Source: Octopus bimaculoides (Eukaryota). From it: DNA of 40,975 nucleotides. Positions 36,213-37,954 of the stretch are shown here, piece after piece. The translations under genes were made by a program, and so were the position numbers. A model generated the notes under the pieces. The model saw only the letters and a program-made list of their open reading frames with translations, made no database searches and was not told where the DNA came from. The stretch is taken from assembly GCF_001194135.2 (NCBI RefSeq), contig NC_069000.1, forward strand, positions 8,675,024 to 8,715,998, written 5' to 3'. The stretch's first letter is position 1. The number at the start of each line of letters is the position of its first letter.

Positions 36213-37694
36213 CTATAATTCACTCTCGTGAAGTATATTTTGTAGCTCTTCATCATTGGCAAGGTCTTCTACTGAGTGAATGAATTCCAAAACAAATTTT
36301 TTGTATTCAGCATTTCCATTTCCATACTCATATAAATCATGCACTATTTCCTTTATCTCCCAAATTTTTATCAGGTCTTTATTGAAAGGAAGAAATTCTA
36401 CAGCAGATTTAAGAGCCAGAACAAACCTATCCATTCCAGAACGTCTTAATCGATCTTTTTCTTCTTCATCATTTTTTTCGTCTGCTTCTTTAAAACATAA
36501 TCTTCCAAACAAAATGTTAAAATTAACATCTTGTAGTTTGATATCTGTTTTATAACTTTCACAATGTTTCCTGGCATTGTCATATTCTTTCAAAGACATA
36601 TATAATAAAATGATATCATAGTGAACAGATGAATTTCCTGGAGAAAGTTTAAGAGCTTCATCAAAGTGATATTCAGCTTTGTTGACGAAATCATTCCTTT
36701 CTCTATGAGGAATACTTTGAGCATGTTTCAAAAGTTTCGCACAATCATTCGCTTCTTTTGACAAATTTTCGTTCGTTGGGAAATATGTATATTTTGGTTC
36801 ATTCTGTCTTAGATAAATTAATCCAAGATTATGATGAGAATATGATGTTGCCTTTTTTTCAATTACTTTTTCATAAAATTTTATTGCTTGTTCAAGCTGA
36901 TGTGAACATCTATAATGATTTGCAATTTTCTCCAAAACATAGGTGTCATCAGGAGAAATATGAAGAGCTCTCTGAAAATAGTCTTCATATGGTTGACGAA
37001 GAAAATTATACGAATTCTTTTTAAACAAACCTATCAATGTTAATGTTCTTCCCATTAGGGCCTTGTCAATACGGTGTGGAAAAGCACATCGTATTTTCTC
37101 TAAATACTGTATTGATTCCTTAATACTTTTAAGTATTTTCTCTTTATCCATGGTGTTTCTTAAACAACGATATTGCAACAAAGCAATAGAGAAGAGACAC
37201 AAATAATTGTCCGGACAAACATTGAGAGTCTCTTTGTAAAGTTTGATAGCCCTTTCGTAATCATTAAAAGAAATAGTAGCTAAACAATAAGCGACATTCC
37301 TTTTACCTTCTGCTTCTATCAGCGGGAAATTTCCCCGTTTTACAAAACTACTTAGATTATCCAAAAGGTTTTCTAGCTTAGAGATATTTCCGTTGCACAA
37401 ATAAATGAATGCAAGATTGGTTAATGCCACCAGGTTATCTGGCTTTTTTTCCCGAACTTCAATGGCTAATTTTTCAGCCTGGATTTTTTCGTTCAGCTGC
37501 CACAGAATAAATACTATGACGTTCTTTTGACGAATCTCATCTTCTAAACCAAATAAGATGTCTTTATTCAACGAATCGTCTACTTTTCTGTAGAGAGACG
37601 ACCAAACTTCTTCGGTCTTCTCAAAACTTTCTTCCATTACATTTGGAAATCTTTTAATTCTTTCCCTGTACAATTCGATTTTACGTTCACCATC
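36213..37694 (-). CDS. TPR-repeat protein, IFIT/TTC22-like; large terminal coding exon (493 aa)
   Basis: Long stop-free ORF in ~30% GC sequence. TPR-type helices: NLVALTNLAFIY, DYERAIKLYKETLNVCPDN, YFQRALHISPDDTYVLEKIANHY, EQAIKFYEKVIEKKATSYSHHNLGLIY, HFDEALKLSPGN. Strong acceptor TTTCTATTTCAG at 37695. The frame is also open to an ATG at 37949, so the 5' end is uncertain. Confidence 0.85.
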   Translation of the reverse strand, partial: DGERKIELYRERIKRFPNVMEESFEKTEEVWSSLYRKVDDSLNKDILFGLEDEIRQKNVIVFILWQLNEKIQAEKLAIEVREKKPDNLVALTNLAFIYLCNGNISKLENLLDNLSSFVKRGNFPLIEAEGKRNVAYCLATISFNDYERAIKLYKETLNVCPDNYLCLFSIALLQYRCLRNTMDKEKILKSIKESIQYLEKIRCAFPHRIDKALMGRTLTLIGLFKKNSYNFLRQPYEDYFQRALHISPDDTYVLEKIANHYRCSHQLEQAIKFYEKVIEKKATSYSHHNLGLIYLRQNEPKYTYFPTNENLSKEANDCAKLLKHAQSIPHRERNDFVNKAEYHFDEALKLSPGNSSVHYDIILLYMSLKEYDNARKHCESYKTDIKLQDVNFNILFGRLCFKEADEKNDEEEKDRLRRSGMDRFVLALKSAVEFLPFNKDLIKIWEIKEIVHDLYEYGNGNAEYKKFVLEFIHSVEDLANDEELQNILHESEL

Positions 37695-37954
37695 CTGAAA
37701 TAGAAACAAAATGATTGTATGAAATATGATATCGACTGTTATCATGGAGAAATATGCATTTCCTAGTTTTCCTGTTTTAAGCCAATGAAACAAGGTAAAG
37801 GTAGTTGATGAGCATTTTGGATTATACACTTTGATGCCTTTAAAAGAAATAAGGTCAGAGATGGAGTTGAAGAGCGCTAGAAGCCCTGGGGAAGAAGGAT
37901 TGGTTAATATGTAACATGTGTGAGAATATATACTTGATGAGTATTGCATGACAT

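What the first reader, a model, noticed from the sequence alone, without database searches (positions are those of the whole stretch)
36213..37949. IFIT-like TPR gene in a probable cephalopod genome
Seen: a 493-codon single exon of TPR repeats behind a strong phase-0 acceptor. By-eye alignment to recalled vertebrate IFIT sequence keeps motif order and spacing: NLVALTNLAFIY ~ SLVTWGNFAWMY, DYERAIKLYKETLNVCPDN ~ NYERAKACFEKVLEVDPEN, DTYVLEKIANHYR ~ QTYVFRYAAKFYR, YSHHNLGLIY ~ LLHHQIGLCY. The N-terminal part also resembles TTC22 (PDNLVALTNLA ~ PGNLNAWANLA). Established: vertebrate IFITs are interferon-induced 5'-RNA-end binders whose CDS lies almost wholly in one large last exon. Inference: this could be an invertebrate antiviral RNA-end sensor of the IFIT/TTC22 lineage acting without canonical interferon.
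Basis: partly seen in the sequence, partly recalled or inferred. Interest (0 to 1): 0.72.

Follow-up and report, generated by a model that had tools for sequence, protein, structure and literature searches.

The report
Octopus IFIT-like TPR gene
This is a real, intact two-exon gene of Octopus bimaculoides whose protein is closest, in sequence and predicted fold, to vertebrate IFIT antiviral proteins. It lacks three residues that are among the most important for IFIT5's grip on the 5' end of viral RNA, and it lacks the TIR signalling domain that most of its mollusc relatives carry.

Summary
On the minus strand, a 493-codon TPR exon (37694..36213) follows a canonical phase-0 acceptor. A 17-codon first exon (40332..40282) completes the gene, which is Octopus bimaculoides LOC106877582 (510 aa).

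The "IFIT-like" reading is supported. IFIT5 and IFIT1 are the best natural hits among solved structures, for both an octopus profile and a profile of other molluscs. The 14 best Foldseek matches of the AlphaFold model are all IFIT1 or IFIT5. Congeners' copies are already auto-named "IFIT1B/5-like".

The "5'-RNA-end sensor" reading is not supported as stated. Three high-effect IFIT5 triphosphate-site residues (Q41, K150, R253) are K/D, T and E here. R186, Y250, R260 and H287 are kept.

The gene belongs to a family found here only in molluscs, in which many members add a C-terminal TIR domain (TLR TIR, E 3e-8). This copy has none.

An ISRE-consensus element lies about 60 bp upstream of the ATG, and at the same place in the paralogue. 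dN/dS is 0.74–0.94 with intact ORFs.

Most likely it is a fast-evolving innate-immune clamp or regulator, not a proven RNA binder.

The parts
36213..37694 (-). Coding exon 2 of LOC106877582: 493 codons of IFIT-like TPR protein plus the stop codon (36213..36215)
   Evidence: tblastn of P0001 residues 18-510 at 100% identity; sequence read; Pfam TPR families
37695..37949 (-). 3' end of intron 1, which stays open in frame by chance. It contains the polypyrimidine tract and the AG acceptor (tttgtttctatttcag).
   Evidence: The annotated product P0001 starts exon 2 at DGERK.
37695..40281 (-). Intron 1 (2587 bp), containing an assembly gap of Ns at 38276..38470
   Evidence: Exon positions; N runs
40282..40332 (-). 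Coding part of exon 1: ATG plus 16 codons (MANELQGITKTLQELKI), followed by the donor gtgagt; phase 0
   Evidence: tblastn of P0001 residues 1-17 at 100% identity; sequence
40384..40395 (-). ISRE-consensus element GGAAAAGAAACA, 52-63 nt upstream of the ATG, in sense orientation
   Evidence: It is the only match in the 41-kb window to D-GAAA-N-GAAA-S-H. The core GGAAAMGAAAC is expected 0.01 times by chance. The same element lies about 60-70 nt upstream of the ATG of the paralogue P0008. The consensus is taken from PMC3688568.
38586..38787 (.). Intronic cluster of IRF-core motifs: 5 of the window's 9 AAGTGAAA sites, within an 89-bp tandem repeat of 1.8 copies. Possible enhancer, or just a repeat.
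36075..36080 (-). AATAAA polyadenylation-like signal 135 nt after the stop codon

Best explanation
The feature is the intact two-exon gene LOC106877582 of Octopus bimaculoides. It encodes a 510-aa all-helical TPR protein that is a divergent homologue of vertebrate IFIT proteins. It belongs to a family found here only in molluscs (cephalopods, gastropods, bivalves). Many family members, and most of the long ones, couple an IFIT-like TPR clamp to a C-terminal TIR domain. The window gene is a short paralogue without the TIR domain. Shown here: gene structure, TPR content, IFIT-like sequence and fold, family membership, TIR domains in relatives, a promoter element shared with the paralogue, and fast protein evolution with a preserved ORF. 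Inferred: it acts in innate immunity, is probably transcribed through an IRF/ISRE-type element, and works as a ligand-binding clamp or as a regulator or decoy of the TIR-bearing long paralogue, much as IFIT3 modulates IFIT1. It probably does not bind 5'-triphosphate or cap0 RNA ends in the way IFIT1 and IFIT5 do, because part of the triphosphate site is replaced by neutral or acidic residues. Binding of another RNA feature or of a protein partner in the channel (R193, Y163, Y269, K273, R279, H305) remains possible.
For: Gene model and identity. TPR content. IFIT is the best natural PDB hit by sequence, for the single protein (IFIT1 5e-7), the octopus profile (IFIT5 1.4e-10, IFIT1 1e-8, IFIT2 2e-5) and the independent profile of other molluscs (IFIT1 9.5e-19, IFIT5 1.2e-15). 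hhalign of the octopus profile against a vertebrate IFIT5 profile gives 98.7%, E 3.7e-16, 327 columns in register. The reverse search with an IFIT5 HMM gives its best single-domain scores to mollusc members, aligned from the N-terminus. AF2 model: pLDDT 80, pTM 0.74. Foldseek ranks 1-14 are all IFIT1 or IFIT5 at full length, TM 0.48-0.60; the IFIT1 N-terminal domain gives TM 0.73; the next family, OGT, gives 0.41/0.25. Family: every collinear hit outside Octopus that carries a name is a mollusc protein. TIR domain: the profile of the C-terminal domain hits TLR15/2, IL1RAcP, TRAM, TLR3 and the oyster TIR-STING TIR domains, E 3e-8 to 3.5e-5, and the domain is found in 31 of the targets searched. 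ISRE-consensus element at the same place upstream of both O. bimaculoides paralogues. dN/dS is 0.74-0.94 against the closest O. vulgaris and O. sinensis copies, with all ORFs intact. Several copies exist in O. vulgaris and O. sinensis. Pocket residues: read against PMC9677429.
Against: Sequence similarity to IFITs is only modestly above the generic TPR background. In single-target hhalign, IFIT5s score E 2e-9 to 2e-13, against 1e-9 for the best generic TPR proteins. With phmmer, TPR-rich proteins outscore the octopus protein when IFIT1 is the query. Global TM-scores to IFITs are moderate (0.5-0.6), and the AF2 alignment was shallow (9 octopus sequences). No expression, induction or binding data exist. 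The transcription start is unknown, so the ISRE-like element could lie in the 5' UTR. A dN/dS near 1 also fits relaxed constraint. Orthology among the octopus copies was not established.
Confidence: 0.55

Rival explanations
1. One reading: a true functional equivalent of IFIT1 or IFIT5, which binds 5'-PPP or cap0 RNA ends in a basic channel and sequesters viral RNA without interferon.
For: IFIT1 and IFIT5 are the closest structures and sequences. R186, Y156, Y250, R260, H287 and an aromatic residue at W146 and at F284 are kept (R193, Y163, Y269, R279, H305, Y153, Y302). Most other molluscs and the long octopus paralogue keep a basic residue at K150 and often at K257.
Against: Q41, K150 and R253 are K/D, T and E in this protein. 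hhalign confidence at these positions is about 0.7 for K150 and 0.9 for R253, and two other alignments agree. K150M alone lowers IFIT5 affinity about 15-fold, and Q41E/K150M/R253M about 150-fold (PMC9677429). K257 is N. The pI is 6.2, against 8.1-8.5 for the turtle and penguin IFIT5.
Confidence: 0.15
2. An ordinary TPR scaffold protein with no immune role. Its likeness to IFITs would then reflect the degenerate TPR motif rather than common descent or shared function.
For: TPR proteins cross-match widely: 815 representatives at E<1e-3. Some generic TPR proteins come close to the IFIT scores in hhalign. An earlier study rejected invertebrate 'IFIT-like' BLAST hits as generic TPR proteins (PMC3688568).
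Against: The match to IFITs is collinear from the N-terminus over more than 300 residues, including non-canonical parts such as the YVLxK and HHxLGL motifs and the loop position. IFITs occupy the 14 best structural ranks. Relatives carry TIR domains. Copy number differs between species, dN/dS is high and an ISRE-type element is conserved.
Confidence: 0.15
3. A decaying, truncated copy of a TPR-TIR gene: transcribed or not, but under relaxed constraint and without a function of its own.
For: It lacks the TIR domain that many relatives have. The short copies examined in O. vulgaris and O. sinensis keep frame-shifted TIR relics just 3' of their stop codons. dN/dS is 0.74-0.94. The protein has lost basic residues that the long paralogue keeps (K150 position R to T).
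Against: The 510-codon ORF, the start codon and both splice sites are intact. ORFs of the same length are intact in three species at dS of about 0.16; under neutrality several stop codons or frameshifts would be expected (my estimate, not computed). The promoter element is retained. TIR-less forms of about 450-500 aa also exist in bivalves and gastropods.
Confidence: 0.15

Closest known systems
[quoted passage not shown]
   Same: About 480-510 aa of irregular TPR helices. Best sequence and fold matches. Shared motifs in register: LV(T/A)..N.A(W/F), YERA, YV(L/F)xxxAxxYR, HHx(I/L)GL. R186, Y250, R260 and H287 are conserved. The gene has a tiny first coding exon and one large exon. An ISRE-consensus element lies near the start. 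The family is multi-copy and fast-evolving.
   Different: Only 13-18% identity in the structural alignments. Q41, K150, R253, Y254 and K257 are not conserved (K/D, T, E, K, N). The protein is acidic. The first exon encodes 17 codons in phase 0, whereas mammalian IFITs have ATG plus 2 nt (PMC3688568). The host has no known interferon system (background knowledge). Most relatives carry a TIR domain, which no vertebrate IFIT has (background knowledge).
Vertebrate IFIT2 and IFIT3 (family members not known as 5'-PPP or cap binders; IFIT3 acts as a partner and modulator of IFIT1) - their functions are cited from background knowledge
   Same: Same family fold (IFIT2 E 2e-5, IFIT3 6e-3 by profile; Foldseek TM 0.45-0.52 to IFIT2). 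They offer a plausible functional analogy for a clamp that lacks the triphosphate triad and may work through partners.
   Different: Sequence and fold matches are weaker than to IFIT1 and IFIT5. No evidence here for domain-swapped dimers or for an IFIT3-type C-terminal interaction motif.
Mollusc IFIT-like TPR-TIR proteins (uncharacterised; for example O. bimaculoides LOC106878804, and proteins of Tegillarca, Batillaria, Pomacea and Pinctada). They fall within the 'uncharacterised cytosolic TIR-DC proteins' noted for bivalves (PMC10279657).
   Same: Collinear homology over the whole TPR region: 56% identity to LOC106878804, and E 1e-24 to 1e-12 to other molluscs. Same two-exon layout and same promoter element as the paralogue.
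   Different: The window gene has no TIR domain and no detectable relic of one. It has also lost the basic residue at the K150 position that the long forms keep.
TTC22
   Different: Not testable here. There is no TTC22 in the PDB library, and none of the representatives whose names were looked up is TTC22.
Generic TPR superhelices (OGT, CDC27/APC3, consensus CTPR designs)
   Same: Canonical TPR repeats at residues 250-400 match strongly.
   Different: The matches cover one to three repeats at arbitrary offsets, not the whole protein. Structural TM-scores normalised to the query are 0.41 or lower.

Membership tests
IFIT family (vertebrate IFIT1/1B/2/3/5) | Collinear sequence homology to IFIT proteins over most of the length, above the generic TPR background | tested here: met
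   PDB profile searches put IFIT5 and IFIT1 first among natural proteins. hhalign gives 98.7%, E 3.7e-16, 327 columns. Caveat: the margin over the best generic TPR proteins is modest.
IFIT family (vertebrate IFIT1/1B/2/3/5) | IFIT-type global fold: an irregular TPR clamp of three subdomains | tested here: met
   AF2 model with pLDDT 80. Foldseek ranks 1-14 are all IFIT1 or IFIT5 at full length, TM 0.48-0.60; the IFIT1 N-terminal domain gives TM 0.73. This rests on a predicted structure, not a solved one.
IFIT family (vertebrate IFIT1/1B/2/3/5) | Gene organisation: two exons, with a very short first coding exon and the rest of the CDS in one exon (PMC3688568) | tested here: met
   Exon 1 has 17 codons and exon 2 has 493 codons. 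The paralogue has the same layout. It differs in detail: 51 nt in phase 0, rather than ATG plus 2 nt.
IFIT family (vertebrate IFIT1/1B/2/3/5) | ISRE motif(s) close to the transcription start; consensus (G/A/T)GAAAN(1-2)GAAA(G/C)(A/T/C) in PMC3688568 | tested here: inconclusive
   One exact consensus match lies 52-63 nt upstream of the ATG. It is unique in the window and conserved in position in the paralogue. The transcription start and any binding by octopus IRFs are unknown.
IFIT family (vertebrate IFIT1/1B/2/3/5) | Induction by interferon, virus or dsRNA | not testable with these tools
   No expression data are reachable. No paper on mollusc IFIT-like genes was found in the library.
IFIT1/IFIT5 subgroup (binders of RNA 5' ends) | Conserved site for the triphosphate and first nucleotides: T37, Q41, K150, R186, Y250, R253, Y254, R260, Q288 (mutations of high effect, PMC9677429 Table 5) | tested here: not met
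   Kept: T37 as S58, R186 as R193, Y250 as Y269, R260 as R279. Changed: Q41 to K61/D62, K150 to T157, R253 to E272, Y254 to K273, Q288 to N306; K257 is also changed, to N276. This is an alignment-based test, not a structural or biochemical one.
IFIT family (vertebrate IFIT1/1B/2/3/5) | Lineage-specific tandem expansion and fast evolution | tested here: inconclusive
   Nine protein models in O. vulgaris lie on one chromosome record, as do at least four in O. sinensis, against two found in O. bimaculoides. A next gene starts about 10 kb downstream in O. sinensis. Whole-gene dN/dS is 0.74-1.68 among short forms. No second copy lies in this window. No site models were run.
Mollusc IFIT-like TPR-TIR family (defined here) | N-terminal IFIT-like TPR region collinear with other members | tested here: met
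   hhalign probability 99.0-99.6% to the bivalve and gastropod members tested.
Mollusc IFIT-like TPR-TIR family (defined here) | C-terminal TIR domain | tested here: not met
   The protein ends at residue 510 with no TIR domain. No relic was found in the window. TIR-less short forms also exist in other molluscs.
TTC22 | Sequence homology to TTC22 stronger than to IFITs | not testable with these tools
   No TTC22 sequence was available in any library that I could query by name.

The most novel reading that the evidence does not exclude
IFIT-type TPR clamps predate vertebrates and interferon. In molluscs the ancestral form would be a cytosolic sensor in which an IFIT-like ligand-binding (probably RNA-binding) clamp is fused to a TIR signalling or NADase domain. 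TIR-less copies such as this octopus gene would be fast-evolving stand-alone binders or decoys in a virus-host arms race, switched on through an IRF/ISRE element without interferon.
Probability: 0.25. Interest if true: 0.75.

Novelty: new variant of a known kind. Interest (0 to 1): 0.45.

Why it matters
The published view in the papers I could search is that the IFIT family arose with interferon in jawed vertebrates, and that invertebrate look-alikes are generic TPR proteins (PMC3688568). Here an IFIT-like family found in three classes of molluscs passes sequence-profile, fold and gene-structure tests, and many of its members are fused to a TIR domain. If confirmed, this would give an interferon-independent setting in which to ask what IFIT-type clamps originally recognised and how they signalled. 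It would also add a family to the poorly understood cytosolic TIR repertoire of molluscs. For this particular gene the result is more sober. It is an already annotated locus, it has no TIR domain, and its RNA 5'-end pocket is incomplete, so it should not be called an RNA-end sensor without experiments.

Tried and rejected
1. Word-indexed homologue searches with the protein and with the octopus alignment found only Octopus proteins. The exhaustive HMMER search was needed to reach other molluscs.
2. The structure prediction of the C-terminal extension of the paralogue failed (pLDDT 38 with a two-sequence alignment). Pfam found nothing in it. The TIR assignment therefore rests on profile searches against the PDB.
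3. A search for promoter conservation by blastn across the four loci found only simple repeats. No exon 1 could be located upstream of the O. vulgaris and O. sinensis short copies with a simple pattern, and P0002's own locus was not on record. Cross-species promoter comparison was therefore not possible.
4. A canonical two-nucleotide-spacer ISRE, GAS and NF-kB motifs were absent from the 600 bp upstream of the ATG. Only the one-nucleotide-spacer ISRE form is present.
5. The excess of GAAANNGAAAS in the window (11 against 0.65 expected) is partly explained by repeats: two sites share repeat flanks and two lie in an 89-bp tandem repeat. I do not treat it as evidence of regulation.
6. Literature searches for IFIT in octopus, cephalopods, oysters, bivalves or molluscs returned nothing relevant. 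A search for TPR-TIR proteins in molluscs returned only a general statement on uncharacterised TIR-DC proteins.
7. Total phmmer scores with IFIT1 as query were rejected as a membership test, because TPR-rich proteins accumulate score over many repeats.
8. No basic-channel or electrostatics test was possible, because model coordinates are not returned.
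Full report
**What is in the sequence**

The coordinates 36213..37949 are a mechanical ORF of 578 codons on the minus strand. Read on that strand, a polypyrimidine tract and AG (ttttgtttctatttcag|GATGGT) precede codon 86. From there 493 codons run to a TAG at 36215..36213. The 85 codons before the acceptor are intron sequence that happens to stay open. Pfam finds TPR_1, TPR_2, TPR_19, TPR_17, TPR_11 and related families above their cut-offs.

One part was missed: a first coding exon at 40332..40282. 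It encodes ATG plus 16 codons (MANELQGITKTLQELKI), ends in phase 0 and is followed by gtgagt. The intron is 2587 bp and holds an assembly gap at 38276..38470.

**Where it comes from**

The spliced product is 100% identical to 'uncharacterized protein LOC106877582 [Octopus bimaculoides]', 510 aa. The locus lies on chromosome record CM046620.1 of GCA_001194135.2. Close relatives (69-78% identity) in O. sinensis and O. vulgaris already carry the automatic names 'interferon-induced protein with tetratricopeptide repeats 5-like' or '1B-like'. A 736-aa paralogue in O. bimaculoides, LOC106878804 (P0008, 56% identity), lies about 8.6 Mb away on the same chromosome and has the same two-exon layout.

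**Is it IFIT-like? Sequence tests**

- The single protein against all PDB sequences gives human IFIT1 as the best natural hit (E 5e-7). It is one collinear stretch, residues 73-407 of the exon-2 product against 79-394 of IFIT1. Only designed consensus TPR proteins rank higher.
- A profile of nine octopus sequences puts IFIT5 first overall (1.4e-10; profile 102-424 against IFIT5 94-394). IFIT1 follows at 1e-8, IFIT2 at 2e-5 and IFIT3 at 6e-3.
- A profile built only from gastropod and bivalve relatives gives IFIT1 9.5e-19 and IFIT5 1.2e-15. The signal thus grows with an independent, broader profile, as expected for real homology.
- hhalign of the octopus profile against twelve amphibian, reptile and bird IFIT5 sequences gives probability 98.7%, E 3.7e-16 and 327 aligned columns in register.

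**Controls on the sequence evidence**

TPR proteins cross-match easily, so I ran controls.

- Against single targets, IFIT5 sequences score E 2e-9 to 2e-13 in register from the N-terminus. Mollusc relatives score 1e-17 to 3e-24.
- The best-scoring generic TPR proteins, taken from the 150 best hits among 1.84 billion representatives, score 5e-4 to 1e-9 at arbitrary offsets.
- In the reverse direction, a vertebrate IFIT5 HMM gives its best single-domain scores to mollusc members aligned from their N-termini.

The margin over the background is real but modest. Total phmmer scores are useless for this question, because repeat-rich proteins accumulate score.

**Is it IFIT-like? Fold test**

An AlphaFold2 model has mean pLDDT 80 and pTM 0.74 and is all-helical. 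Its alignment was shallow, with nine octopus sequences. Foldseek against the PDB returns IFIT1 or IFIT5 in all of the first 14 places. These matches have E 1e-9 to 7e-8, about 500 aligned columns and TM 0.48-0.60. The isolated IFIT1 N-terminal domain gives TM 0.73 at 4.5 Å. The next family, OGT, reaches only TM 0.41/0.25. The moderate global TM-scores are not surprising for a multi-subdomain clamp. This is the most discriminating evidence for the IFIT-like reading.

**The family**

The exhaustive HMMER search finds only four representatives below 1e-30, all from Octopus. After them comes a tail of collinear hits at 1e-24 to 1e-8. Every such hit that carries a name is a mollusc protein. The species are Batillaria, Argopecten, Gigantopelta, Mercenaria, Tegillarca, Pinctada, Bulinus, Nucella, Pomacea and Biomphalaria. 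Two of these hits are auto-named IFIT5(-like).

Many hits are 700-1200 aa long. The extra C-terminal region of the octopus paralogue is homologous to that of bivalve members.

- A four-sequence profile of this region hits TIR domains in 19 of its 20 PDB matches.
- A 17-sequence profile hits TLR15/2 TIR at 3e-8, IL1RAcP at 7.5e-7, TRAM at 1.8e-6, TLR3 at 2.4e-5 and the oyster TIR-STING protein at 3.5e-5.
- The domain is detected in 31 of the targets searched (about 150 top representatives plus the octopus sequences), C-terminal to the TPR region.

The common architecture of the long members is therefore an IFIT-like TPR clamp followed by a TIR domain. The window gene is a short form without a TIR. 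The short copies examined in O. vulgaris and O. sinensis keep frame-shifted relics of the TIR region 90-630 nt past their stop codons, so those copies derive from long ones. No relic is detectable in this window.

**The RNA site**

PMC9677429 (Table 5, compiling earlier mutagenesis) lists IFIT5 mutations with a high effect on PPP-RNA binding: T37V, Q41E, K150M, R186A, Y250F, R253M, Y254F, R260E, Q288E and F337A. K150, R253 and R186 make the three strongest electrostatic contributions. The Q41E/K150M/R253M triple mutant drops from 13 nM to 2 µM.

HMMER, hhalign and MAFFT agree on the equivalents in the octopus protein, except at Q41.

| IFIT5 residue | Octopus residue |
|---|---|
| W146 | Y153 |
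| K150 | T157 |
| Y156 | Y163 |
| R186 | R193 |
| Y250 | Y269 |
| R253 | E272 |
| Y254 | K273 |
| K257 | N276 |
| R260 | R279 |
| F284 | Y302 |
| H287 | H305 |
| Q288 | N306 |
| T37 | S58 |
| Q41 | K61 or D62, depending on the alignment |

Across the family:

- R186 is invariant in every aligned mollusc and vertebrate sequence except one truncated octopus model that lacks the region.
- The K150 position is R or K in most molluscs and in the long octopus paralogue.
- R253 is never basic in molluscs, but the next residue is usually K or R.
- K257 and R260 are often basic.

The family as a whole thus keeps a partly basic, aromatic-lined channel. This gene has lost two more of those charges and is mildly acidic (pI 6.2, against 8.1-8.5 for the turtle and penguin IFIT5). 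I conclude that IFIT1/5-style recognition of a 5'-triphosphate or cap is unlikely for this protein. Some other ligand in the channel remains possible. Model coordinates are not returned, so I could not compute a surface.

**Regulation hints**

PMC3688568 defines the ISRE used for vertebrate IFIT promoters as (G/A/T)GAAAN(1-2)GAAA(G/C)(A/T/C), usually within 200 bp of the transcription start.

- The one-nucleotide-spacer form occurs exactly once in the 41-kb window: GGAAAAGAAACA at 40395..40384, sense strand, 52-63 nt upstream of the ATG.
- Its core, GGAAAMGAAAC, is expected 0.01 times by chance.
- The core also occurs only once in the 26-kb paralogue locus (GGAAACGAAACT), about 60-70 nt upstream of that gene's ATG. 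The wider consensus has one further match in that locus, on the other strand.
- The two promoters are otherwise unalignable.

This points to a conserved cis-element of IRF/ISRE type. The transcription start is unknown and no binding was tested.

Intron 1 also holds 5 of the window's 9 AAGTGAAA cores within 176 bp, inside an 89-bp tandem repeat. This may be an enhancer or just a repeat.

**Tempo of evolution**

Nei-Gojobori estimates over the 493 codons:

| Comparison | dN/dS |
|---|---|
| window gene vs closest O. vulgaris copy | 0.74 |
| window gene vs closest O. sinensis copy | 0.94 |
| those two copies vs each other | 1.68 |
| window gene and each of those two copies vs the long paralogue | about 0.5 |

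All ORFs are intact at dS of about 0.16. The searches found two genes in O. bimaculoides, at least four in O. sinensis and nine protein models in O. vulgaris, each species' copies on one chromosome record. Fast evolution with preserved ORFs and changing copy number is typical of immune genes, but it does not exclude relaxed constraint. Orthology was not established and no site models were run.

**How it most likely works**

Shown: the gene, the TPR protein, its IFIT-like sequence and fold, the mollusc family, the TIR domains in relatives, the shared promoter element and the evolutionary rate.

Inferred: the protein folds into an IFIT-type clamp and is expressed through an IRF-type element. It acts in innate defence in one of two ways. 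It may be a stand-alone binder of a ligand other than a 5'-triphosphate end. Or it may be a TIR-less regulator or decoy that pairs with the long TIR-bearing paralogue, by analogy with IFIT3 acting on IFIT1. I put this composite at 0.55. The rivals are a true IFIT1/5-type RNA-end binder, a generic TPR scaffold and a decaying truncated copy, at about 0.15 each.

**Novelty**

The locus is already annotated, and its congeners are auto-named IFIT-like, so the bare observation is not new. In the searchable literature I found no study of mollusc or cephalopod IFIT-like genes. The one evolutionary survey places the origin of IFITs in jawed vertebrates and dismisses invertebrate candidates; it sampled only sea urchin, acorn worm and lancelet. 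Bivalve cytosolic TIR proteins are described as numerous and uncharacterised. The IFIT-like TPR-TIR architecture and the altered pocket make this a new variant of a known kind rather than a simple new member.

**Limits**

There are no expression or biochemical data. The structure is a prediction from a shallow alignment. The pocket analysis depends on alignments at 13-25% identity, although three methods agree except at Q41. The TTC22 suggestion could not be tested.

Noticed in passing
L002:15175-15870 (O. bimaculoides LOC106878804, protein P0008 residues 505-736); also P0010, P0026, P0095 and at least 25 other mollusc relatives: The long members of the family end in a divergent TIR domain (YDIxIL...GLKVT..RD..G...S...). 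Profile searches hit TLR15/2, IL1RAcP, TRAM, TLR3 and oyster TIR-STING TIR domains (E 3e-8 to 3.5e-5). Pfam does not detect the domain in single sequences. An IFIT-like TPR clamp fused to a TIR domain appears to be undescribed in the papers I could search.
   Followed up: yes
L003:11575-12044 (O. vulgaris) and L004:11508-12049 (O. sinensis): Frame-shifted relics of the TIR-region coding sequence lie just 3' of the stop codons of the two short-form genes examined (474-aa models). These copies therefore arose by truncation of long TPR-TIR genes. No such relic is detectable 3' of the window gene.
   Followed up: partly
Proteins P0026/P0164 (Tegillarca) and P0095, alignment A3 columns about 355-545: Bivalve relatives carry a long Arg/Gly-rich insertion (for example RGRGRGRGK and GRGRRGK) right after the SFSHHHLGL motif. 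This is the loop position that is short in IFITs and poorly predicted (residues 316-347) in the octopus model. RGG-type tracts often bind RNA.
   Followed up: no
window 19041-20906 (+): A 621-codon ORF in a GC-rich island (49-53% GC) encodes an NDFIP-like protein. It has a long low-complexity Ser/Thr/Pro-rich N-terminus with a PPPPY motif. The C-terminus matches the NEDD4/Bsd2 family (PF10176, E 1.5e-29). It is unrelated to the finding.
   Followed up: partly
window 2239, 7482, 11187, 17418, 29428, 37696, 38608, 38711, 39232: ISRE-type strings with a two-nucleotide spacer (DGAAANNGAAASH) occur 9 times, against 0.6 expected from shuffles. The sites at 2239 and 39232 share repeat flanks (a dispersed element), and the sites at 38608 and 38711 lie in a tandem repeat. 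The rest of the excess is unexplained.
   Followed up: partly
window 38624-38787: An 89-bp tandem repeat (1.8 copies, 89% match) in intron 1 is densely packed with GAAAGT and AGTTTC units. Five AAGTGAAA cores lie at 38586-38761.
   Followed up: partly
window 40729-40917 (minus strand, about 400-590 bp upstream of the ATG): An imperfect palindrome of about 190 bp (about 75% self-complementarity) lies in the upstream region. It may be a MITE-like insertion.
   Followed up: no
window exon 2 compared with L003:9944-11422 and L004:9944-11422: Whole-gene dN/dS among the short-form octopus copies is unusually high (0.74, 0.94, 1.68), with all 493-codon ORFs intact.
   Followed up: partly
window, ten N runs (for example 790-1234, 22727-23517, 33413-34104, 38276-38470) and many di- and trinucleotide arrays (for example 40097-40238): The window is a gap-rich draft assembly full of microsatellites. 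One gap lies inside intron 1 of the gene, so the intron length and content are not fully known.
   Followed up: no
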